DNA of 64,000 bases, taken from positions 62,001 through 126,000 of the IMG/VR virus record IMGVR_UViG_3300044701_003160. One strand, written 5' to 3'. The notes beneath the pieces were generated by a model, which had not been told where the DNA came from, did no database searches, and saw only the letters and a list, made by a program, of their open reading frames with translations. Shown piece after piece: positions 2,446 to 55,624 of this stretch. The position numbers and the translations under genes are program-made. Every line of letters starts with the position of its first letter. The stretch's first letter is position 1.

Positions 2446-3759
2446 TTATTTTCTCCCAATTGATTCTCTTACAAGATTGAGTCTTGTATAACATCCATTT
2501 TTTGTTATATGATTACACAAATCTGCAATCATATAAACTCCACTTACTTTTTGACTTACAAGTTTTGTGGGATTACTAGAAATCTCTGGGAAATCACAGT
2601 AAACTAAATCTCCAGCACGAAGATCGAAGTCTCCTGGAATTGCGATTGAAAGTTTAGTAGAGAAAAGATTATTATATCTCATATAAGATTGTCTTAAAAT
2701 CTCATCATTATTATAGTTTATCTCTTTTGATTTTGGAAGTTGAGACTTTAAATCTTTTCCTTCAACCAAAGCACCTTGGTCATCAAATTTAAAAGATCTT
2801 CTTGATGTTTTATTTTGGATATCTAAGTCTTTTGCAATTACAGGTTGTTCTTTTCCACCAATATTATTTTCTTTAAATTGTTCTTTAGAATCAAAATCAT
2901 TCTTACGATATTTACTTTGATAAGTGTTTACTGCATTAAGTTCTGATTTTAATTGAGATCCTGTAGTTAATATATTTTTAAGATCCAAAGAACTCTCAAA
3001 GGAATATTGTAAAATTTTTGCATCATAAGTTGGTGGAATTTCTCCGATTATATTATTAAATATCAATCTCCTTTTTGGTTTTTGCTCAAACAGTTTATCA
3101 ATTGACTTGAATTTATATCCCTCATAAGTTTCATAAAAGAAAAATCCTGCAAGTTTTCCTTTTGAGTCTGCAACATCAGGTACAGATCTTGGTGCTAACC
3201 ATGCAGATTTATAAAAAGGTTTTTCAACATTCCCAATAAAACTTAGATTGTTTAGTGTAGTATCAATATCAATTTCTTTTTGTGTCTTTAAAACCTCTGT
3301 TAAAATTTTATTTACTGAATCGGATATTTTTCCATCATATCTTTTTTTAACCCGATATTCCACTAACTCATTATCAATTGCTTCCTTAGTGAAAAGATCG
3401 ACTGTAAATGTGACTTTGTTTGTTGTACTTACGGTTTGTCTTGGTTCTTTAATTCGCAAGTGCTTAGAACCAAGAAGTGAGAGTGTTTTATCATATCCAT
3501 CAGTCATCTTAAGTTCAACTTTTTCACCTACAGTAAGTTTAAGACCTTCCTCTTCAGTAACTGCAGAACCTTCTTCTTTTCGATATCCAGTATCTGCAAA
3601 TGTTGCATTAACTCTAATAGTAGGATCTAAAATACTCTCATAATAATTAAGTTCAACAATACCCCCCGACATATCAACTTTAGGTCTACCATAATTTGAA
3701 TAAAATTCAAATAAATCAATTTGGGCTTGGCCGCCTTGTGCTGCAATATTTGCTGGCAT
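2446..3759 (-). CDS. Putative baseplate hub protein (gp27-like)
   Basis: 437 aa, next to gp5; ELNYYESILDP..., FFFYETYEGYKFKS, IAIPGDFDLRAGD, SGVYMIADLCNHI resemble contractile-tail hub proteins. Confidence 0.5.
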   Translation of the reverse strand: MPANIAAQGGQAQIDLFEFYSNYGRPKVDMSGGIVELNYYESILDPTIRVNATFADTGYRKEEGSAVTEEEGLKLTVGEKVELKMTDGYDKTLSLLGSKHLRIKEPRQTVSTTNKVTFTVDLFTKEAIDNELVEYRVKKRYDGKISDSVNKILTEVLKTQKEIDIDTTLNNLSFIGNVEKPFYKSAWLAPRSVPDVADSKGKLAGFFFYETYEGYKFKSIDKLFEQKPKRRLIFNNIIGEIPPTYDAKILQYSFESSLDLKNILTTGSQLKSELNAVNTYQSKYRKNDFDSKEQFKENNIGGKEQPVIAKDLDIQNKTSRRSFKFDDQGALVEGKDLKSQLPKSKEINYNNDEILRQSYMRYNNLFSTKLSIAIPGDFDLRAGDLVYCDFPEISSNPTKLVSQKVSGVYMIADLCNHITKNGCYTRLNLVRESIGRK

Positions 3760-19488: not shown

Positions 19489-19527
19489 ATTTTACACAAA
19501 AAAAGGAAGGTTGTCAATCCTTCCTTT
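19489..19527 (-). terminator. Intrinsic terminator overlapping a sigma70 promoter
   Basis: GGAAGG-attgacaa-CCTTCC-T7; TTGACA(19512-19517)-N17-TAAAAT(19489-19494). Confidence 0.8.
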
Positions 19528-19532
19528 TGATT

Positions 19533-19634
19533 TTAGGCAACTTGGGGTTGCTTTGCCATATTCAATTGTGCGATATGAAGTAGTTTTTCTTTCTTATCTT
19601 TTTTCTTTAGATAACGAACAAAATAAGTATTCAT
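19533..19634 (-). CDS. Small basic peptide (33 aa)
   Basis: MNTYFVRYLKKKDKKEKLLHIAQLNMAKQPQVA; ATGA-coupled to upstream ORF. Confidence 0.55.
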   Translation of the reverse strand: MNTYFVRYLKKKDKKEKLLHIAQLNMAKQPQVA

Positions 19635-19765
19635 TTTTCTACCTCCTTCACAAACTTAACACCACGATAGGTTTCATTATATTGTTGAGGTTGTTGCTGG
19701 GCCTGCTGCTGCTGGCGGCGAATTTCGGTGTCATATTCAACACCACGATAAACGACTTTAGACAT
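19631..19765 (-). CDS. DUF4278-like small protein (44 aa)
   Basis: MSKVVYRGVEYD...QQQQAQQQPQQ...TYRGVKF: two YRGV motifs; AAGGAG RBS. Confidence 0.8.
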   Translation of the reverse strand: MSKVVYRGVEYDTEIRRQQQQAQQQPQQYNETYRGVKFVKEVEK

Positions 19766-19794
19766 TAGGGTTCTCCTTAGTTTTGAGTTAAAGA

Positions 19795-19893
19795 GCGTTC
19801 CTTCAGTCGGCGTTTGCGTTCGCTATTTGCGAATAGCGAATGAACGATCCGTTCCGCGTCGGCTTACTTCCGTCACATAATGTGATGAACGAT
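19795..19893 (-). ncRNA. Tandem glutamine riboswitch (glnA-type) candidate
   Basis: Two units each opening ATCGTTCA and closing GGAACG; first has GACGGAAGTA, second CCGACTGAAGGAACGC; hairpins TCACAT/ATGTGA and TTCGCTATT/AATAGCGAA; upstream of DUF4278. Confidence 0.75.
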
Positions 19894-19926
19894 ATTATTA
19901 TTTACCGGAAACTTTTGTATCTTTTG

Positions 19927-20253
19927 TTACCGTTCGATATAACTTAATGTATGATTGGTTGCAGATAACTGCTGAATGATTATATCACATCCAATCTTCG
20001 GTTGGCAATCGCCACAAGTATAAACATCTACCGCTGCTTTGCCCTCTTCAGGCCACGTATGAATGCTAATATGACTCTCTGAAAGTAAACATAAAACAGT
20101 AACTCCCTGAGGATCAAACTTTTTTGATATTGTTTGAACCACAGTAGCACCGCTTGCTGCTGCTGCGTTTTCTAATAAGTCTATAAGACAACGCTCGTCG
20201 TCCAAAAGGACAAACGAGCAACCGTACAGGTTTAAAAGATAATGCTTACCCAT
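19927..20253 (-). CDS. speD: S-adenosylmethionine decarboxylase proenzyme (pyruvoyl type)
   Basis: GKHYLLNLYGC; LSESHISIHTWPE.G.AAVDVYTCG. Confidence 0.9.
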   Translation of the reverse strand: MGKHYLLNLYGCSFVLLDDERCLIDLLENAAAASGATVVQTISKKFDPQGVTVLCLLSESHISIHTWPEEGKAAVDVYTCGDCQPKIGCDIIIQQLSATNHTLSYIER

Positions 20254-27430: not shown

Positions 27431-28947
27431 TCAACCGATTGAAGGAGCAGTGAGAGCAACTGGTGTTGCTTCTGCTGCTGCAAGGTCAAGTGGGAAGTTG
27501 TGCTTACAGTTTGGACTATATCTTCACCATACTCTTTATGAGGTTAGGTGTCGGACGCTATTGGTGTATTACATCTCACGCTTGAGAAACCACCTAGTCT
27601 CTGAACCTTCCAATCAAGTTCGTGATTGGCTTGGCTGCTGATTGCCCGTTAGGGTTTCCAGCAATTCATCCGAAGTTTATCTTACCTTTTCAGATAAGAG
27701 CGCCCACAAATCGAGCGTTGCGTTCATGCATGACTTCCATTCCAAGTCCTGCACGATTTAGGACATCTGCCCAAGTGTTAATAACTTTACCTTGACTATC
27801 AACGATAGACTGGTTGAAGTTGAAACCGTTGCACTGAACCCATAAGTTTACCATTCTTATGGAGTGGACTATATCTTCATCCATTTAGGATGTTGGGCGC
27901 TATTGGTGTATTACATCTCACGCTTGAGAAACCACCTAGTCTCTGAACCTTTCCAAGAAGCGTCTTGGACTTGGCTGCTGATTACCCAATATGGAGGGCT
28001 TCCAGCAATTCACCCAATGTTTACCGTCAAATTGCTAGGACGGGACCCCGACGATTGAGGTTAAATGCCATCGTAGAAACACCAAGAGCAGTGAACCAGA
28101 TGCCTACAACAGGCCAGGCAGCCAGGAAGAAGTGCAGTGAACGGGAGTTATTAAAGGAAGCATATTGAAAAATAAGGCGTCCAAAATACCCGTGAGCAGC
28201 AACGATGTTGTAGGTCTCTTCTTCTTGACCGAACTTATATCCGTAGTTCTGTGACTCATTCTCAGTAGTTTCACGAACCAGTGAAGAAGTCACCAGTGAA
28301 CCGTGCATAGCACTGAAGAGTGAACCACCGAACACACCAGCAACTCCAAGCATGTGGAAGGGGTGCATCAGGATATTGTGTTCTGCTTGGAAGACAAGCA
28401 TATAGTTAAACGTACCAGAGATACCAAGAGGCATCGCATCAGAGAAAGAACCTTGACCGAAAGGATAAACCAGGAATACGGCAGAAGCAGCAGCAACAGG
28501 TGCGCTGTAAGCAACACAGATCCAAGGACGCATACCTAGACGGTAAGAGAGTTCCCATTCACGTCCCATATAAGCATAGATGCCGATGAGGAAGTGAAAT
28601 ACAACGAGTTGGAAAGGTCCACCGTTATAAAGCCATTCATCAAGAGAAGCAGCTTCCCAGATAGGATAGAAGTGAAGTCCGATAGCATTAGAAGAAGGAA
28701 CAACGGCACCAGAGATGATGTTGTTTCCGTACATTAGAGAACCAGCAACTGGTTCACGAATGCCGTCGATGTCCACTGGGGGAGCACCAACGAAAGCGAT
28801 AATGAAGCAAGTCGTAGCAGCAAGCAGGCAAGGAATCATCAGGACTCCGAACCAACCAACATACAGACGATTGTTAGTGGAAGTAACCCACTCACAGAAT
28901 TGGTTCCAGGTATTTGTGGAACGTTGTTGAGCAATTGTAGCAGTCAT
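27431..28947 (-). CDS. psbA: Photosystem II D1 protein, three exons (28058-28947, 27714-27831, 27431-27502)
   Basis: Joined exons give 1080 nt = 359 aa + stop, restoring ...[12 protein letters not shown]...[14 protein letters not shown]... Confidence 0.97.
27503..27713 (-). mobile_element. Group I intron 2 of psbA (211 nt, no ORF), after codon A336
   Basis: 5' exon ends in U, intron ends in G; core elements TCAGAGACTA and AAGATATAGTCC; guide UUUGUGGGCG pairs exon 2 end and exon 3 start (CACAA). Confidence 0.93.
27832..28057 (-). mobile_element. Group I intron 1 of psbA (226 nt, no ORF), within codon L297
   Basis: Exon ...AACCU / intron ...CAGUG / exon CAACGG restores frame; core AGAGACTA and AAGATATAGTCC; guide GGGGU pairs ACCU. 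Confidence 0.9.
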
Positions 28948-28949
28948 TT

Positions 28950-29070
28950 GTTTTAAAAGGGTAAGTATGATTCAGGGGGACTGAATGGTTACAAGTATTC
29001 CCACGACACCCTCCATCGTGGGTATGAGGGATGCTTTACTTCTCGTGATCCCGGTTGGAGAAGATTCCGT
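28950..29070 (-). ncRNA. Structured psbA 5' leader (PhotoRC-II-like RNA motif)
   Basis: Hairpins CTTCTC/GAGAAG, CCCACGA/TCGTGGG and ATTCAG/CTGAAT between promoter and psbA ATG; family name from recall. Confidence 0.6.
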
Positions 29071-29112
29071 AGGTAAGAAATTGTTACATTCCTTAACCCC
29101 GTGTATGTATAT

Positions 29113-50643: not shown

Positions 50644-50649
50644 GGGTCT

Positions 50650-50842
50650 TTTAGGCTCGCCACCAATTCTTTGACTGGAAATTGGAAACCAGGCGGGAGT
50701 AAGATCCCATCCGCACCACCAATCCTTGAGAGAGATTGGAAACTCATAATAGGGTCATATTGACTCCACCAGTACTTTTAGAGTCTCTCCGTGACTAAAG
50801 GGGTTCATCACCGACCAGGGCTAGTTTTAAGTCATACCGGGA
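50650..50842 (-). ncRNA. Structured ~190-nt RNA (manA/wcaG-type cyanophage motif candidate)
   Basis: No ORF; hairpins CCAATC/GATTGG, GCGG/CCGC, CCAATT/AATTGG; UGGUG and UGGCG motifs; lies between tRNA region and glycan genes. Confidence 0.6.
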
Positions 50843-51394: not shown

Positions 51395-51467
51395 TGCTCC
51401 TTGCGTGGATCGAACACGCCTCAGGCGAATTATGAGTTCGCTGCATTCACCAGATTGCTAAAGGAGC
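51395..51467 (-). tRNA. tRNA with CAT anticodon (Ile2 or Met)
   Basis: GCTCCTT/AAGGAGC acceptor; GCGAA-CTCATAA-TTCGC; GTTCGAT T-loop; no encoded CCA. Confidence 0.88.
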
Positions 51468-51468
51468 G

Positions 51469-51882
51469 TTATTCATTTAATTGTCGTCTTTGTTTATGAT
51501 ACCCAACTTTTTTATTTAAAGTTTTATAAGTATCTGTTAAAGTATGACAATTAGGACACAAAACTCTTAAATTTTCTTTGTATCCATTTTCTCTTGATCC
51601 ATCTATGTGATCTATTTCAAGATAGATAATACCGTTTGTTGGATTTGGTTTTCCCCATCCACATTCGGAACACTTATATCCTGCCTCTTCAAGCATAAAT
51701 CTTCTAACAAAATCACTTGGTCTTCCATCTCTAACTTTGCCAGTTATTTTTTTAGATAACCAATCAGATATATTTTGTTTATAATAATCTTCTTGTTGGC
51801 ATTTATTAGAGCAGTAAATACCTTTTCCTTGTGAAGGAGAATACTTAAAGTTTTTTTTGCAGTTTTTACAAGTTCCTATCAT
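51469..51882 (-). CDS. HNH endonuclease
   Basis: CxxC...YCSNKC; CSECG...EIDHIDG...N.KENLRVLCPNCH. Confidence 0.9.
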   Translation of the reverse strand: MIGTCKNCKKNFKYSPSQGKGIYCSNKCQQEDYYKQNISDWLSKKITGKVRDGRPSDFVRRFMLEEAGYKCSECGWGKPNPTNGIIYLEIDHIDGSRENGYKENLRVLCPNCHTLTDTYKTLNKKVGYHKQRRQLNE

Positions 51883-51936
51883 CGATGTTAGACCACTCTA
51901 CACTTTTATTTATACTCTAAGTGTAGTTTAGAGTAA

Positions 51937-52024
51937 TACGAGTGCCTGGATTCGAACCAGGTCAAAGCCGCTAATCTGGCGGAAAGAGTTTATAAGACTC
52001 CTCTGACTACCAAGTCTCACTCGC
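51937..52024 (-). tRNA. tRNA-Ile(TAT) with long variable arm
   Basis: GCGAGTG/CACTCGT; GGAGT-CTTATAA-ACTCT; variable hairpin CCGC/GCGG; 88 nt. Confidence 0.8.
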
Positions 52025-52063
52025 ATAAAACCAAATCTATAATAGCGGATCTGGAACGCTTCG

Positions 52064-52291
52064 TCAAGACCCTTCTTCGTGATCGGTATGAATTTTGACT
52101 ATCTCCTCAAAATCCACATTTGACTCTTCACATATACTAACCACATCTTTATAAGGAACCATTACAGCATTTCCGTGTTTGCTAGTAATAAGAAATGATT
52201 CACCATTCTCAACTCTATTCATTAGAGCATCAAAGTCTGATTGAAATTCTTCGATTGTAAATGATTGAAGTTGGTTTAGTTCTTGATTCAT
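52064..52291 (-). CDS. Phd/YefM antitoxin-like protein
   Basis: FTIEEFQSDFDALMNRVENGESFLIT.KHGNAVMVPY fits the Phd N-terminal pattern. Confidence 0.55.
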   Translation of the reverse strand: MNQELNQLQSFTIEEFQSDFDALMNRVENGESFLITSKHGNAVMVPYKDVVSICEESNVDFEEIVKIHTDHEEGS

Positions 52292-52314
52292 TTTTATAAT
52301 ATAAAGATTATAAG

Positions 52315-52388
52315 TCGGGACGATAGGATTTGAACCTACGGCCTGACGCTCCCAAAGCGCCTGCTCTACCAAACTGAGCTACGTCCCG
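52315..52388 (-). tRNA. tRNA-Pro(TGG)
   Basis: CGGGACG/CGTCCCG; anticodon loop TTTGGGA. Confidence 0.95.
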
Positions 52389-52412
52389 ATTTCTTTGTGT
52401 ATCCTATCAGGT

Positions 52413-52571
52413 TTATCGAACCCTGTCAACCACCTGAAGAACACCGTGAGCATAAAAGAAAAGGAGTACTGAACCGATTGTTGCTGATATTATTGTAGCA
52501 GTTTTATTGTGCCTGTCAATGGCTTTTGCAACTGACTGGTCGATCATTTCTTGAACTTCTTCAGGTGTCAT
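52413..52571 (-). CDS. Small membrane protein (52 aa)
   Basis: MTPEEVQEMIDQSVAKAIDRHNK...IGSVLLFFYAHGVL. Confidence 0.55.
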   Translation of the reverse strand: MTPEEVQEMIDQSVAKAIDRHNKTATIISATIGSVLLFFYAHGVLQVVDRVR

Positions 52572-52716
52572 TTTTATTACCAAGAAATTTTGCCAGAGGA
52601 TCTCTTTTTGTTCTAATTATTTCACACGCTCTTTTATAAAACATATTATCAGTATTACCTGATGATTCAAACGTTTCCTTTATTTTAACCCAATTTTGGT
52701 ATGTGTGATCATCCAT
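52561..52716 (-). CDS. Small hypothetical protein (51 aa)
   Basis: MDDHTYQNWVKIKETFESSGNTDNMFYKRACEI... Confidence 0.6.
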   Translation of the reverse strand: MDDHTYQNWVKIKETFESSGNTDNMFYKRACEIIRTKRDPLAKFLGNKNDT

Positions 52717-52803
52717 TTGGGATCTATACGTTATTATTACTAATTTAGTTTAATTAACAATCTTATTTTGTCAAGTATGTGTGGATATCATCATAATTTT
52801 AAA

Positions 52804-52888
52804 CGGTGAGGAAAGGATTCGAACCTTCGGATGCTTTCACATCGACTGTTTTCAAGACAGTTGCCTTAAACCACTCGGCCACCTCACC
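52804..52888 (-). tRNA. tRNA-Ser(TGA)
   Basis: GGTGAGG/CCTCACC; ACTGT-CTTGAAA-ACAGT; long variable arm. Confidence 0.95.
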
Positions 52889-53243
52889 ATATTATTTCCA
52901 ATAAACCAGCGTGTATTTTACGATGACACGGAGAACAGAGCATATAACATTTATCTATTTCTGTTTGGATTGTCTCCCATTTGTATCCTTTTCCCGCTAA
53001 GTAAGAAACTTCCTTTTTCTTATTTTCTGCCTCAATATGATGAAAATCAAAACAACAGGGAGGATGGTAATCTCCACAAGCATCACAACAACCTTTTTCA
53101 AGTTTTAATTGATTTAGTTTTTCAACCATCAACTTTTTATTATTATATTCTCTTTGGTATTTAATTTTTTTAAATTCTCCAGATTGTTTTTGAGCCCAAA
53201 GACGTTGTGCTTCTTTTTGCTTTTCTTTATCTTTATAAGGCAT
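52884..53243 (-). CDS. HNH endonuclease
   Basis: CDACG..HPPCCFDFHH...EIDKCYMLCSPCHRKIH; stop overlaps tRNA-Ser 5' end. Confidence 0.85.
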   Translation of the reverse strand: MPYKDKEKQKEAQRLWAQKQSGEFKKIKYQREYNNKKLMVEKLNQLKLEKGCCDACGDYHPPCCFDFHHIEAENKKKEVSYLAGKGYKWETIQTEIDKCYMLCSPCHRKIHAGLLEIIW

Positions 53244-53284
53244 ATCATTTAAAAGGTTCTAATTTATTTATAAAAAATTAGAAC

Positions 53285-53536
53285 TTAACGGACTTCGAAA
53301 TCAAGACGCCTCACTTTTCTTTGGCGTCTTTGTTCTTGCCAGGCAATATCCTGGGAGGTTAACACGTTTGTTTTTGGTGTTTCCTTTAATGAGTTTAGCA
53401 TTACAATACGGGATAAGTCAACTGCCGAAATCTTATCTCCTCTAATTGTTGCCATATTGGGACATCCACAACTAATAGTTTTTGAAGAGTGCCCCACTAA
53501 TTCTTTACTGCAATCTTTGCATCTTATTGATATCAT
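53285..53536 (-). CDS. Hypothetical Zn-ribbon protein
   Basis: CKDC...CGCPN. Confidence 0.65.
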   Translation of the reverse strand: MISIRCKDCSKELVGHSSKTISCGCPNMATIRGDKISAVDLSRIVMLNSLKETPKTNVLTSQDIAWQEQRRQRKVRRLDFEVR

Positions 53537-53551
53537 TTTTTGTTACCGTAA

Positions 53552-53986
53552 TCACTGTAAATGTGCTCTTAATTGCCAAACAAATTTTCCGTGAGATTCC
53601 ATCAAATCTTGAACTAGATTGGCAGTTGCATAAGATTTTTGAGTTTCAGACTCTTCCGAAATTTCACCCATTAACTCACAAAATTTAGTATTGTTATCCA
53701 AAAGTTCTTGAAGCATCTCTTTTGCTCCCGTAGAACTTGTTGCTTCTTTGATTTGAGTTACTTCAAGCATTCTTGAAAGAGAACTTAAAGGTTTTACATT
53801 TAAGTATCTCATATGTTCGGAGAGCCTGTCAATCTCTTCAAACATCGTTTCATATTGTCCACCAAACAGTTGATGAAGTTGAGTAAAGTCTTCACCTACA
53901 ACATTCCAGTGAAATGCCCAGGTTTTATGGAACAAAACAAAAAGTGATGACTGAGCATCACTGAGTAATTTATAAAGTTTTTCCAT
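53552..53986 (-). CDS. dps: Dps/ferritin-like DNA-protection protein
   Basis: KTWAFHWNVVG.DF.QLH.LF..QY...EIDRLSEH ferroxidase pattern. Confidence 0.9.
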   Translation of the reverse strand: MEKLYKLLSDAQSSLFVLFHKTWAFHWNVVGEDFTQLHQLFGGQYETMFEEIDRLSEHMRYLNVKPLSSLSRMLEVTQIKEATSSTGAKEMLQELLDNNTKFCELMGEISEESETQKSYATANLVQDLMESHGKFVWQLRAHLQ

Positions 53987-54014
53987 TATACTTTTTTTCA
54001 AGTATTTATGCAAA

Positions 54015-54087
54015 TGGGAGCAGAGGGATTCGAACCCCCGACATTCTGCGTGTAAAGCAGACGCTGCTACCGCTGAGCTATGCTCCC
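54015..54087 (-). tRNA. tRNA-Val(TAC)
   Basis: GGGAGCA/TGCTCCC; TCTGC-TTTACAC-GCAGA. Confidence 0.95.
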
Positions 54088-54090
54088 TTG

Positions 54091-54162
54091 TCCTCTGTCT
54101 GGGAATCGAACCCAGTATCCGTGTGTGTTGTCCACCCGTCCTTACCAATAGACTACCAGAGG
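54091..54162 (-). ncRNA. tRNA-like element with non-canonical anticodon arm
   Basis: CCTCTG/CAGAGG acceptor, GTCT..TGGTAA..GGAC D-arm, CTGGG-TTCGATT-CCCAG T-arm; anticodon arm GGTGG-ACAACAC-ACACG lacks U33 and pairs poorly. Confidence 0.7.
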
Positions 54163-54164
54163 TA

Positions 54165-54236
54165 CTCCACAACCTGGATTCGAACCAGGGACCAATCGAT
54201 TAACAGTCGATGGCTCTACCGCTGAGCTATTGTGGA
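54165..54236 (-). tRNA. tRNA-Asn(GTT)
   Basis: TCCACAA/TTGTGGA; ATCGA-CTGTTAA-TCGAT. Confidence 0.95.
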
Positions 54237-54244
54237 ATGTTCTA

Positions 54245-54448
54245 CTACTTAGAACTTACAAAATCATTAATCGTTTCTGCTTGCTTAAGAACATCCTGTA
54301 GAGTTGGAAACTCTGGATAATCCATCTTCACAGTATTTGAAGAATTTAGATTCCAATAACGAGCAGTATCCATTTCAGTACTGAACTGATCATTTAGCAT
54401 ATTATATGCTTGCTTGAAGATTTCAAAACGAAGTTCGTAAGGTGTCAT
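54245..54448 (-). CDS. Hypothetical protein
   Basis: MTPYELRFEIFKQA...AETINDFVS; GGAG RBS. Confidence 0.7.
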   Translation of the reverse strand: MTPYELRFEIFKQAYNMLNDQFSTEMDTARYWNLNSSNTVKMDYPEFPTLQDVLKQAETINDFVSSK

Positions 54449-54495
54449 TTATTTACTCCCGTGTGTTTGTGTGTTTAAAGAACCTGAAGGTTCAG

Positions 54496-54566
54496 AGCGA
54501 GTGACGGGGATCGAACCCGTGACAAGAGCTTGGAAGGCTCGCATGTTACCGCTACACCACACTCGC
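54496..54566 (-). tRNA. tRNA-Gly(TCC)
   Basis: GCGAGTG/CACTCGC; anticodon loop CTTCCAA; own promoter TTGACA-N17-TATGAT (54576-54604). Confidence 0.95.
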
Positions 54567-54605
54567 AATAAGACAATCATAAGGTATAAAACCCAGATTG
54601 TCAAG

Positions 54606-54687
54606 TGCCCAAAAGAGGACTTGAACCTCCACAGATAAATCTACAGGAACCTAAACCCTGCGCGTCTACCAATTCCGCCATTTGGGC
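54606..54687 (-). tRNA. tRNA-Leu(TAG)
   Basis: GCCCAAA/TTTGGGC; CAGGG-TTTAGGT-TCCTG; variable arm. Confidence 0.93.
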
Positions 54688-54690
54688 GGA

Positions 54691-54763
54691 TGGAGAATAG
54701 GAGACTCGAACTCCTGACACCCGCCTTGCAAAGGCCGCGCTCTACCAACTGAGCTAATTCCCC
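54691..54763 (-). tRNA. tRNA-Ala(TGC)
   Basis: GGGGAAT/ATTCTCC with G3:U70; loop TTTGCAA. Confidence 0.93.
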
Positions 54764-54840
54764 AAGATGGAGTAAGTGTGATATACCTCATAAGGATATA
54801 ACAGTGACTTACCCTCTATCACTTTTATATATTACACCAG

Positions 54841-55392
54841 TTATTCGATGGTGTCAAGTCTTAATTTAGAGTGTATCTCTCTGTGACAATTAGAACAAAC
54901 ACATATACATTTGTCAAGTTCCTTTTTTTGGTCTTCCCATTTTCGTATTTTAATGTTACCAAAGTTTTTATCTTTTTGTGATGGGTCTATATGATGAAAC
55001 TCTAAAGCATCGATACACTTATCATATCCGCACCTCTCACATTTTCCACCTTTATAATCAACTGCTCTTTTTTTATTATTTTGCCACCTTTCTACAGAAT
55101 ATTTGTTGTGGCATTTTTTACAATTTGCTTGCCATATTTTTTTACTTTCACGCCAATATCCAGTTTTTTCTGTCAAAAGAACTTTACATTTAGAGCAATT
55201 TTGAATTGGTTTACCATCTACTTTTAAAATTGGATTTAAAATATATCCATCTTTAAATGTTTTATGTTTTGTTTTTAATTGATATTTGTCTAACCAATAC
55301 CTAACAGTGGTTTTTCCTTTACTTTCAAGTTTAGATATTTGTGAGGTTGACATTCCATCTTCAATATATTCTATTAATTTTTGTTTATCCAT
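54841..55392 (-). CDS. HNH endonuclease with N-terminal HTH
   Basis: YKGGKCERCGY.KC..ALEFHH.DP...ELDKC..VCSNCHREIH; contains TTGACA-N17-TAATAT promoter (54829-54857) for downstream tRNAs. Confidence 0.9.
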   Translation of the reverse strand: MDKQKLIEYIEDGMSTSQISKLESKGKTTVRYWLDKYQLKTKHKTFKDGYILNPILKVDGKPIQNCSKCKVLLTEKTGYWRESKKIWQANCKKCHNKYSVERWQNNKKRAVDYKGGKCERCGYDKCIDALEFHHIDPSQKDKNFGNIKIRKWEDQKKELDKCICVCSNCHREIHSKLRLDTIE

Positions 55393-55438
55393 TAGTCCAA
55401 AGGAAATATATTATTATTTATACAATTGAACTATTTAA

Positions 55439-55511
55439 CAGGCGTACCTGGATTTGAACCAGGGATAAGGCTTTAGAAGAGCCGTGTGATAATCCACTTC
55501 ACCATACGCCC
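55439..55511 (-). tRNA. tRNA-Arg(TCT)
   Basis: GGGCGTA/TACGCCT; GGCT-CTTCTAA-AGCC. Confidence 0.92.
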
Positions 55512-55624
55512 ATAAGGAACCTCCCTGTTTGTGCATCGTTGAGAGGCATAGGAGGTGTGGGATTTATGAGAAGTTTGGACCTCCTCCACCCGTGAAACTA
55601 CTATAAGGCATCAGAGCACTAAAG

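What the first reader, a model, noticed from the sequence alone, without database searches (positions are those of the whole stretch)
19533..19893. Tandem glutamine-riboswitch-like leader over a DUF4278 peptide and a second coupled peptide
Seen: two aptamer-like units (ATCGTTCA...GGAACG) with different P2 hairpins precede a 44-aa Gln-rich YRGV protein, which is ATGA-coupled to a 33-aa basic peptide. Neither ORF is in the track. Known: glnA-type glutamine riboswitches occur in tandem and are linked to DUF4278 and glutamine-synthetase-inactivating-factor genes in cyanobacteria. Inference: the phage senses host nitrogen status and may modulate glutamine synthetase; the poly-Gln tract could add translational Gln sensing.
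Basis: partly seen in the sequence, partly recalled or inferred. Interest (0 to 1): 0.7.

Follow-up and report, generated by a model that had tools for sequence, protein, structure and literature searches.

The report
Nested double glutamine riboswitch in cyanophage
A freshwater cyanophage carries a glutamine-sensing RNA switch ahead of two tiny coupled genes; the switch class is known, but its two "tandem" units seem to be one sensor folded inside the other, which the papers I could read do not describe.

Summary
On the minus strand, 19893-19792 holds two units that match Rfam glutamine riboswitch RF01739 at 36.1 and 33.1 bits (cutoff 35). They are followed by an SD, a 44-aa DUF4278-type peptide (ORF A), an ATGA-coupled 33-aa basic peptide (ORF B) and a terminator. 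Glutamine riboswitches in cyanophages, their tandem occurrence and their link to DUF4278 genes are already published, so the basic finding is a new member of a known kind. Comparison with 127 related leaders gave three further results. (1) The units are probably nested, not sequential. The first CGUUC pairs with the last GAACG to form a canonical aptamer. The middle GAACG-GAU-CGUUC hairpin forms a second, permuted module where stem P3 normally sits. Support comes from the closing tertiary pairs, the split loop-E halves, a covarying 2-bp P3 base and P1 compensations, but independent evolutionary events are few. (2) The base that closes the outer aptamer (C19795) is also the first base of a conserved anti-SD, which implies a glutamine-ON translational switch. 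(3) ORF B belongs to a conserved, unnamed peptide family that is sometimes fused to ORF A. The idea that the phage inhibits glutamine synthetase remains untested, and the poly-Gln sensing idea has no support.

The parts
19917..19930 (-). GTA-N8-TAC palindrome (consensus of the NtcA nitrogen-regulator site). It lies 39 nt upstream of the aptamer and overlaps the speD stop codon.
   Evidence: One search lists the site; the same palindrome lies within 90 nt upstream of 92 of 119 related leaders (about 3 expected from shuffles). Binding by NtcA is inferred, not tested.
19887..19891 (-). Outer P1, 5' strand (CGUUC). A6 follows at 19886.
   Evidence: In the nested model it pairs with 19800-19796. 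Position 5/55 covaries between the first and last strands in L199, L382 and L398 and (CG 63, GC 1, UA 1).
19873..19885 (-). Hairpin P1a-1 (UCACA-UUA-UGUGA)
   Evidence: Predicted in the MFE fold. All four outer pairs covary across relatives (helix 2).
19870..19872 (-). C21-G22-x23 strand of the outer aptamer. x23 = G19870 is the tertiary partner of C19795 (pair A).
   Evidence: Pair A is Watson-Crick in 127 of 127 unique leaders (C:G 76, G:C 51) and 65 of 65 in alignment A1. The pairing role is taken from G23:C60 of the solved glutamine-I aptamer (PMC6212724, PMC6698751).
19865..19868 (-). AGUA half of the loop-E motif. It is present only in unit 1.
   Evidence: Invariant in alignment A1. Loop E in the glutamine-I junction is described in PMC12510878.
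19863..19864 (-). P3-base 5' strand (AG), pairing with CU at 19806-19805
   Evidence: helix 4. First pair: AU 46, GC 11, CG 5, GU 1, unpaired 2. Second pair: GC 65.
19842..19855 (-). Inner P1-like hairpin: G54' at 19855, GAACG (19854-19850), triloop G19849-A-U, CGUUC (19846-19842). G19849 is x60', the partner of C19816 (pair B).
   Evidence: Predicted in the MFE fold. Pair B across relatives is C:G 75, G:C 19, U:A 5, U:G 4, G:U 2, with 22 mismatches. My scan patterns fixed the two strand sequences.
19819..19840 (-). Hairpin P1a-2 (UUCGCUAU-UCGCAA-AUAGCGAA)
   Evidence: MFE fold. Covariation, helix 7. In 42 relatives this hairpin carries a 138-199-nt insertion holding an ORF.
19816..19818 (-). 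C21'-G22'-x23' strand of the inner module (x23' = C19816)
19796..19806 (-). P3-base 3' strand CU (19806-19805), GAA half of loop E (19804-19802), G54 (19801), outer P1 3' strand GAACG (19800-19796)
   Evidence: GAA before GGAACG occurs only in unit 2.
19789..19795 (-). x60 = C19795 (closes the outer aptamer with G19870), which is also the first base of the anti-SD CUCUUUA
   Evidence: The MFE fold pairs 19795-19789 with 19779-19773. The tail is CUCUUUAA in 44 of 51 leaders of this class, and x60 and the SD are paired in 48 of 50 folds.
19773..19779 (-). Shine-Dalgarno region UAAGGAG of ORF A, 7 nt before the AUG
19631..19765 (-). ORF A: 44 aa, DUF4278-type, two YRGV motifs flanking a Gln-rich linker
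   Evidence: Alignment A3 has invariant Y6 R7 G8 Y11 R34 G35.
19533..19634 (-). ORF B: 33-aa basic peptide with an ATGA overlap and its own SD (AAGGAGG, 19648-19642)
   Evidence: The same overlap occurs in 43 unique leaders. Conserved core N-x-L-x-h-I-K/R...K...L..AQL. It is fused to the YRG peptide in S-CREM1 and L046.
19501..19528 (-). Intrinsic-terminator-like hairpin (10 bp) followed by a U run, 4 nt after the ORF B stop

Best explanation
The element is the 5' leader of a two-peptide operon in a freshwater T4-like cyanophage, and it is a glutamine riboswitch that turns translation on when host glutamine is high.

Proposed structure. The two repeat units do not fold as side-by-side aptamers. 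The first CGUUC (19891-19887) pairs with the last GAACG (19800-19796). Together with the AGUA/GAA loop E, this forms one canonical glutamine-I aptamer, closed by the tertiary pair G19870:C19795. A second aptamer-like module occupies the place where stem P3 normally sits. It consists of the middle GAACG-GAU-CGUUC hairpin, hairpin P1a-2 and a CGC strand, and it is closed by C19816:G19849. This inner module is a circular permutation of the same core.

Proposed switch. C19795 is also the first base of the anti-SD CUCUUUA, which pairs with the Shine-Dalgarno of ORF A. Ligand-driven closure of the outer aptamer would therefore compete with the anti-SD helix and free the ribosome-binding site. ORF A is then translated, and ORF B follows through the ATGA overlap and its own SD. 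A terminator ends the unit.

What is shown here: family membership, the helices, the covariation of the tertiary pairs, and conservation of the anti-SD and of both peptides.

What is inferred: glutamine binding (by homology), ON polarity (by analogy with Synechocystis gifB), two-ligand cooperativity, and what the peptides do. My best guess for the peptides is modulation of host nitrogen assimilation.
For: - Family: RF01739 hits at 36.1 and 33.1 bits. Related leaders reach the cutoff. S-CREM1 already has 'riboswitch glnA' annotated at the homologous site.
- Nesting, closing pairs: pair A is Watson-Crick in 127 of 127 leaders with both polarities. When unit 1's x60 is C, unit 2's x23 is G in 19 of 20. 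The rare configurations C/C;G/G, G/C;G/C and C/A;U/G all fit the cross-unit pairs.
- Nesting, pair counts: the nested structure has 98.9% of cells paired. The sequential model's closing pairs form in 49% and 48%.
- Nesting, other features: AGUA is only in unit 1 and GAA only in unit 2. The P3 base covaries (AU 46, GC 11, CG 5). The first and last P1 strands compensate while the middle strands stay canonical, in L199 (G:C), L382 and L398 (U:A).
- Nesting, outside support: the S-CREM1 authors' Infernal run gave one 99-nt hit of 44 bits spanning both units.
- Switch: the MFE fold shows both hairpins, the inner hairpin and a 7-bp anti-SD:SD helix starting at x60. This platform is conserved in 48 of 50 leaders of the class. 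The same mechanism was proposed for gifB, where glutamine raises expression (PMC6212724).
- Operon: ATGA overlap in 43 unique leaders, natural ORF A-ORF B fusions and a terminator.
- Transcription hint: lake metatranscriptome contigs cover the leader, one of them identical over 19787-19872.
Against: - On a tree with the focal columns masked, pair A changes state only about twice. Pair B gives 4-5 independent contrasts (about 3 concordant, 0 discordant), which is not significant.
- Pair B is mismatched (C.A, C.U and others) in 22 of 127 leaders, so the inner module may not always close.
- My collection scans fixed the two middle P1 strands, so their invariance is partly by construction. Two scans were deliberately enriched for rare variants.
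- P1 compensation rests on three sequences (two or three events).
- Because the four P1 strands are identical in most leaders, both registers may form, perhaps as part of the switch.
- No binding, structure-probing or reporter data exist for this RNA.
- No clear promoter lies directly upstream in the window.
- The peptides' function is unknown.
- I could not read Ames & Breaker 2011 or Ren 2015, which might already discuss the tandem form.
Confidence: 0.65

Rival explanations
1. Two independent, sequential glutamine-I aptamers ('pseudo-cooperative' tandem, as tandem glutamine riboswitches are classed in the literature). Each closes its own P1 and its own closing pair, and only the 3' unit talks to the SD.
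For: - Each unit on its own matches RF01739 end to end.
- Sherlock 2022 lists 157 glutamine doublets as pseudo-cooperative.
- In the commonest class (C/G;C/G) both readings pair equally well.
- The Rfam glutamine-II model aligns unit 1 of some relatives in the sequential register.
Against: - In the window, unit 1 would have G.G and unit 2 C.C at the closing pair.
- Across alignment A1 the intra-unit closing pairs form in only 49% and 48% of sequences.
- Each unit lacks one half of loop E.
- The units are 3 nt apart, leaving no room for a separate expression platform.
- L199, L382 and L398 would carry P1 mismatches.
Confidence: 0.12
2. Nested fold, but only the outer aptamer binds glutamine. 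The inner hairpin module is a structural replacement for P3, or a decoy that offers alternative P1 partners, so the switch has one ligand site.
For: - Pair B is mismatched in 22 of 127 leaders.
- The inner module has no loop E.
- Its P1-like helix is closed by a tight 3-nt loop.
- The MFE fold forms it without any ligand.
Against: - The inner module keeps every base that contacts glutamine in the solved structures (C1:G59, G2:C58, G22; PMC6698751).
- It also keeps a covarying closing pair (C:G, G:C, U:A), which a purely structural stem would not need.
Confidence: 0.2
3. The apparent cross-unit covariation is a lineage effect. A few clades happen to differ at these positions, and the RNA's real tertiary pairs are something else.
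For: - Pair A changes state only about twice on the tree.
- The independent-contrast tests are not significant.
- The sequences come from pattern scans, two of which were deliberately enriched.
Against: - Several unrelated features point to the same topology: pair A, pair B, the P3 base, P1 position 5/55 and the loop-E halves.
- In the conserved cores, x23 of unit 1 and x60 of unit 2 are the only systematic differences between the two big classes, and they are complementary.
- The prediction 'x60 of unit 1 = C implies x23 of unit 2 = G' was made before scan 39 and held in 19 of 20.
Confidence: 0.1

Closest known systems
Glutamine-I (glnA RNA) riboswitch, Rfam RF01739; gifB leader of Synechocystis sp. 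PCC 6803
   Same: - Same conserved core: CGUUCA, hairpin, CGG-AAGUA ... GAAGGAACGC.
- A one-base-pair pseudoknot G23:C60.
- A loop E in the junction.
- x60 and the following bases act as the anti-SD, giving ON translational control.
- The downstream gene is of DUF4278 type.
   Different: - The P3 position holds a complete second, permuted aptamer-like module in place of a short stem.
- The host is a phage.
- The regulated product is a 44-aa peptide that lacks the IF7-like GS-binding part of IF17, plus a second peptide.
Glutamine-II (Downstream-peptide) riboswitch, RF01704
   Same: - Same ligand-pocket bases.
- The inner module has the glutamine-II polarity of the closing pair (C...G).
- Like glutamine-II, the inner module lacks a loop E.
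- Glutamine-II also regulates short DUF4278 peptides in marine picocyanobacteria.
- Its core can assemble from two pieces and forms domain-swapped dimers in crystals (PMC6698751).
   Different: - The window has no glutamine-II P2 helix.
- The window scores only 15.1 bits against a 33-bit cutoff.
Tandem glycine riboswitch (two aptamers, one expression platform, inter-aptamer contacts)
   Same: Two homologous ligand-binding modules for the same amino acid share a single expression platform and are physically coupled.
   Different: - The glycine aptamers are sequential and dock through A-minor contacts.
- Here one module is nested inside the other, and the strands of the two P1 helices interleave.
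Annotated cyanophage glnA riboswitches (e.g. S-CREM1, OP535465; S-PM2 p190/p191 locus)
   Same: - Homologous leader: S-CREM1 is 87.8% identical over 156 nt and S-PM2 is 81.6% identical over 170 nt.
- S-PM2 has the same synteny (speD, leader, two small ORFs, thymidylate synthase).
   Different: - S-CREM1 has ORF A and ORF B fused into one 48-aa protein.
- S-PM2's closing pairs are C/G;C/G, whereas the window's are G/G;C/C.

Membership tests
Glutamine-I riboswitch (RF01739) | Covariance-model score at or above the gathering cutoff (35 bits) | tested here: met
   - Unit 1 scores 36.1 bits on the virus record.
- Unit 2 scores 33.1 bits, just under the cutoff.
- The default scan of the 64-kb window reported neither.
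- The homologous S-CREM1 leader scored 44 bits as one hit in its authors' run.
Glutamine-I riboswitch (RF01739) | P1 (CGUUC/GAACG) and a covarying hairpin next to it | tested here: met
   Both hairpins covary strongly (helices 2 and 7). P1 is conserved, with rare compensations.
Glutamine-I riboswitch (RF01739) | Long-range closing pair G23:C60 | tested here: met
   It is met only across the units: G19870:C19795 in the window, and 127 of 127 in relatives. It is not met within either unit of the window (G.G and C.C).
Glutamine-I riboswitch (RF01739) | Loop E formed by AGUA and GAA in the junction | tested here: met
   Both halves are present and invariant, but they are split between unit 1 (AGUA) and unit 2 (GAA).
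Glutamine-I riboswitch (RF01739) | Selective binding of L-glutamine and ligand-dependent gene control | not testable with these tools
   This needs in-line probing or ITC, and a reporter assay.
Independent ('pseudo-cooperative') tandem riboswitch | Each aptamer is structurally complete and has its own expression platform | tested here: not met
   Only 3 nt lie between the units. Each unit lacks one loop-E half and a within-unit closing pair.
DUF4278 (PF14105) / IF17-like proteins | Pfam score at or above the gathering cutoff (25.3 bits) | tested here: inconclusive
   The window's ORF A scores 20.1 bits, E 8.5e-4. All 25 aligned relatives match at E below 0.01, the best at 1e-6.
Glutamine synthetase inactivating factors IF7/IF17 | IF7-like C-terminal region with the conserved arginines that bind GS | tested here: not met
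   - No similarity for ORF A or ORF B in Pfam, NCBIfam, PDB sequences or the atlas.
- DUF4278 covers only the N-terminal part of IF17, which is dispensable for inhibition.
- I made no direct alignment to IF7 or IF17 sequences.

The most novel reading that the evidence does not exclude
The abundant 'tandem' glutamine riboswitches of cyanomyoviruses are a single interlocked two-site sensor. A canonical glutamine-I aptamer carries a circularly permuted second aptamer in place of P3, so that two ligand-dependent closing pairs must form before the anti-SD is released. In many relatives the variable hairpins of this sensor carry translated ORFs of 50-67 codons. Their start codon lies in the hairpin stem and their stop codon lies inside the conserved aptamer core, so translation and aptamer folding would exclude each other.
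Probability: 0.5. Interest if true: 0.75.

Novelty: new variant of a known kind. Interest (0 to 1): 0.6.

Why it matters
Glutamine riboswitches are the main RNA sensor of nitrogen status in cyanobacteria, and a large share of them occur as doublets that reviews treat as independent units. If the phage doublets are really one aptamer nested in another, they would be a new natural way to build a two-site, probably cooperative, sensor from one fold. They would also be a natural example of a circularly permuted aptamer. That would change how tandem hits of this family should be annotated, modelled and engineered.

It would also show that cyanophages wire a host metabolite signal (glutamine), probably together with an NtcA-type site, to a conserved pair of tiny peptides of unknown function. 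Those peptides are then good candidates for factors that manipulate host nitrogen metabolism.

Tried and rejected
- **Default Rfam scan** of the whole window at gathering scores found no glutamine hit. Permissive and genome-wide searches were needed.
- **Glutamine-II model:** 15.1 bits in the window, so not a member.
- **My first regex parser** mis-parsed unit 2 whenever its loop contains CGCAAAUA. It was replaced by a stem-aware parser. My automatic detection of the first strand was unreliable, and only the manually checked cases (L199, L382, L398) are used.
- **Loose or empty scans:**
  - Scan 50 returned only random hits.
  - Scan 51 returned one false hit.
  - Scan 54 (position 56 variants) and scan 95 (x23 = A/U) returned nothing.
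  - Most of the 14 metagenome hits were mis-parses of the hairpin or random.
- **First idea, 'swapped closing pairs between sequential aptamers':** superseded by the nested model once the loop-E halves, the P3 base and the P1 compensation were seen.
- **ORF B:** no hit in Pfam, NCBIfam, PHROGs, PDB sequences or the protein atlas. It is too short for the search for homologous proteins.
- **Complex prediction:** ORF A plus ORF B alone gave no verdict (score 0.01), which counts neither for nor against binding.
- **Papers not held:** Ames & Breaker 2011 and Ren 2015.
- **Genome-collection scan:** only short MAG or single-cell contigs that look phage-derived. The pattern was specific to the phage form, so it says nothing about cellular doublets.

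Full report
**1. What is there**

The window is part of a complete 219,018-bp virus record from fresh water (window = bases 62001-126000). It is a T4-like cyanomyovirus. Its nearest isolates at this locus are Synechococcus phages S-SRM01, S-CREM1, DSL-LC02/03 and S-PM2.

All features of the finding lie on the minus strand. In order:
- speD (S-adenosylmethionine decarboxylase), 20253-19927
- the leader, 19893-19766
- ORF A, 19765-19631
- ORF B, 19634-19533
- a terminator-like hairpin with a U run, 19528-19501
- a 51-aa acidic ORF, 19467-19312
- thyX, 19315-18557

S-PM2 and S-SRM01 share this order, including two small overlapping ORFs behind the leader.

**2. Checking the observation**

Both units match Rfam RF01739, the glutamine riboswitch:
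- On the 601-nt stretch: 33.1 bits for 19848-19792 and 26.2 bits for 19893-19850.
- On the whole virus record: 36.1 bits, over the 35-bit cutoff, for 19893-19846, and 33.1 bits for the second unit. The genome holds no further copy.
- The default scan of the 64-kb window missed both.

Homologous leaders in ten phage records also hit RF01739, and three pass the cutoff. GenBank already annotates 'riboswitch glnA' at the homologous place in S-CREM1.

ORF A is a weak DUF4278 match (20.1 bits, cutoff 25.3) and a clear phrog_5049 match (E 8.7e-14). All 25 aligned relatives hit DUF4278.

**3. What is already known**

- Weinberg 2010 described glnA RNAs, their tandem occurrence and their link to PMT1479-type genes.
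- Klaehn 2018 showed that the aptamer in the gifB leader is an ON riboswitch. They found that glutamine riboswitches sit mainly before DUF4278 genes, and proposed that C60 and its neighbours form an anti-SD that is melted when G23:C60 forms.
- The S-CREM1 paper lists glnA among known cyanophage RNAs.
- Sherlock 2022 counted 157 glutamine doublets and classed them as pseudo-cooperative, that is, independent riboswitches.

**4. The units are probably nested, not sequential**

The starting point was the closing pair. The solved structures give it as G23:C60 in glutamine-I and C19:G41 in glutamine-II. In the window, unit 1 reads CGG...GAACG-G and unit 2 reads CGC...GAACG-C. Neither unit can close on itself, but each could close with the other.

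I collected related leaders from IMG/VR with a junction pattern. I then ran two scans aimed at rare variants, so that predictions could be tested.

Results in 127 unique leaders:

| Pair | Result |
|---|---|
| Pair A (x23 of unit 1 : base after unit 2's P1) | Watson-Crick in all 127 (C:G 76, G:C 51) |
| Pair B (x23 of unit 2 : base after unit 1's P1) | C:G 75, G:C 19, U:A 5, U:G 4, G:U 2, mismatched 22 |
| Within-unit pairing | Works in only 68 of 127 for each unit |

Where unit 1's x60 is C, unit 2's x23 is G in 19 of 20.

Three further features show that the P1 strands themselves are nested:
- **Loop E is split.** It needs AGUA and GAA. AGUA occurs only in unit 1 and GAA only in unit 2.
- **A P3 base closes the middle.** The two bases after AGUA pair with the two bases before GAA, and the first of these pairs covaries (AU 46, GC 11, CG 5).
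- **The first and last P1 strands compensate.** Three sequences with canonical middle strands carry compensating changes: L199 (CGUUG...CAACG), L382 and L398 (CGUUU...AAACG). Sequential pairing would give mismatches in all three.

On a 65-sequence alignment the nested structure has 98.9% of cells paired. The sequential structure's two closing pairs form in 49.2% and 47.7% of sequences.

The outer part therefore reads exactly like the canonical consensus (CGUUCA, hairpin, CGG-AAGUA, [P3], GAAGGAACGC). The P3 position is taken by a permuted copy of the same core: GGAACG-x60'-AU-CGUUCA, hairpin, CG-x23'.

Two Infernal results agree with this. The S-CREM1 authors' run aligned the whole 99-nt doublet as one 44-bit hit. 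In S-B68 the Rfam hit spans 125 nt.

**5. Caveats on nesting**

- On a tree built with the four focal columns masked, pair A changes state only about twice. Pair B gives 4-5 independent contrasts, about 3 concordant and 0 discordant, which is not significant. The case rests on several different features agreeing, not on the raw counts.
- My scans fixed the two middle strands, and two of the scans were enriched for rare states.
- No A or U occurs at x23 of unit 1 in IMG/VR.
- I could not read Ames & Breaker 2011 or Ren 2015. The papers I could read describe only the single aptamer or call the doublets independent.

**6. Expression platform**

The unconstrained fold of 19900-19755 contains both hairpins, the inner GAACG-GAU-CGUUC hairpin, and a 7-bp helix between CUCUUUA (19795-19789) and UAAGGAG (19779-19773). 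The first base of that anti-SD is C19795, the partner of G19870.

In the 51 unique leaders with x60 = C, the tail is CUCUUUAA in 44. In 48 of 50 folds, x60 and the SD core are paired.

This is the arrangement proposed for gifB, so a glutamine-ON translational switch is the most likely logic. Leaders with x60 = G have different tails, and I did not work out their logic.

**7. The peptides**

ORF A relatives keep Y6 R7 G8 Y11 R34 G35. The Gln-rich linker is confined to the clade that contains the window. Marine relatives have an unrelated linker, so the linker is not needed for the riboswitch-peptide unit.

ORF B is a real gene family:
- It has an ATGA overlap in 43 unique leaders.
- It has a conserved basic core, N-x-L-x-h-I-K/R...K...K/R-L..AQL, at only 17-39% identity between subtypes.
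- It has its own SD.
- It is fused to the YRG peptide in S-CREM1 and L046.
- It stands alone behind the riboswitch in L110, L136 and L218.

ORF B has no match in Pfam, NCBIfam, PHROGs, PDB sequences or the atlas.

DUF4278 corresponds to the N-terminal part of IF17. That part stabilises the protein but is dispensable for inhibiting glutamine synthetase. Inhibition of GS by these peptides is therefore only a hypothesis.

**8. Transcription**

Most relatives have a sigma-70-like promoter that would start the RNA at the first aptamer bases (66 of 119). They also have a GTA-N8-TAC palindrome further upstream (92 of 119, about 3 expected).

The window has the palindrome at 19930-19917 but no clear promoter directly upstream. 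A promoter-like site inside speD (20008-19979) or read-through from speD are the candidates.

Lake metatranscriptome contigs cover 19717-19874 only, and one is identical over 19787-19872. This hints at transcription of this or closely related leaders, but it is not proof.

**9. Verdict**

- The feature is a known riboswitch class in a known kind of host.
- The nested architecture, the conserved second peptide and the ORF-bearing hairpins of relatives appear to be undescribed and are testable.

Noticed in passing
L001:1371-1538, L004:1581-1733 and 40 further IMG/VR loci (e.g. L120, L026, L036): In 42 unique related leaders the second hairpin (P1a-2) carries a 138-199-nt insertion with an ORF of 49-66 codons (ME[AT]LILTCLQAQ...KECKIDAKAD or MFHLAVIA...CDWDAKAD). 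The AUG lies in the 5' strand of a covarying 5-8-bp stem. In nearly all, the stop codon lies 13 nt after the CGC, inside the conserved GAC-UGA-AGGAACG. Translation of this ORF and folding of the aptamer should exclude each other.
   Followed up: partly
L401 (minus strand, about 2490-3000 of the reverse complement): Both variable hairpins carry ORFs here. The first hairpin has a 220-nt insertion with a 67-codon ORF that starts at the stem AUG, and the second has the MEALILTCLQAQ-type ORF. The aptamer core is therefore split into three pieces over about 500 nt. L386, L387 and L392 may be similar.
   Followed up: partly
window 19917-19930, and upstream of 92 of 119 related leaders: A GTA-N8-TAC palindrome (NtcA-site consensus) is strongly enriched upstream of these riboswitches (92 of 119 against about 3 in shuffles), mostly 58-59 nt before the aptamer and 39 nt before it in the window. 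In the whole window the motif occurs 16 times against 8.7 expected.
   Followed up: partly
window 19489-19517 (minus strand): A near-consensus sigma-70-like promoter (TTGACA, 17 nt, TAAAAT) overlaps the terminator hairpin after ORF B. It could drive the next gene, the 51-aa acidic ORF at 19467-19312 (phrog_878), which is a conserved neighbour in relatives.
   Followed up: no
window 27491-27723 and 27840-28067 (minus strand): Two group I introns lie about 120 nt apart (77.6 and 84.8 bits), downstream of a PhotoRC-II RNA at 28987-29076. This suggests a photosystem gene interrupted twice.
   Followed up: no
window 50649-50747; 55519-55555; 51395-55512 (minus strand): A wcaG RNA (98.1 bits), an abiF RNA (44.9 bits) directly beside tRNA-Arg, and a cluster of 11 tRNA genes with no tRNA-Gln among them.
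   Followed up: no
L002:1610-1756 (S-CREM1) and L046: These are natural fusions of the N-terminal YRG motif of ORF A with an ORF B-like C-terminus. phrog_545 matches the ORF B-like part at profile positions 2-24 and a YRG segment at 25-40, so that family may hold the two parts in the opposite order.
   Followed up: partly
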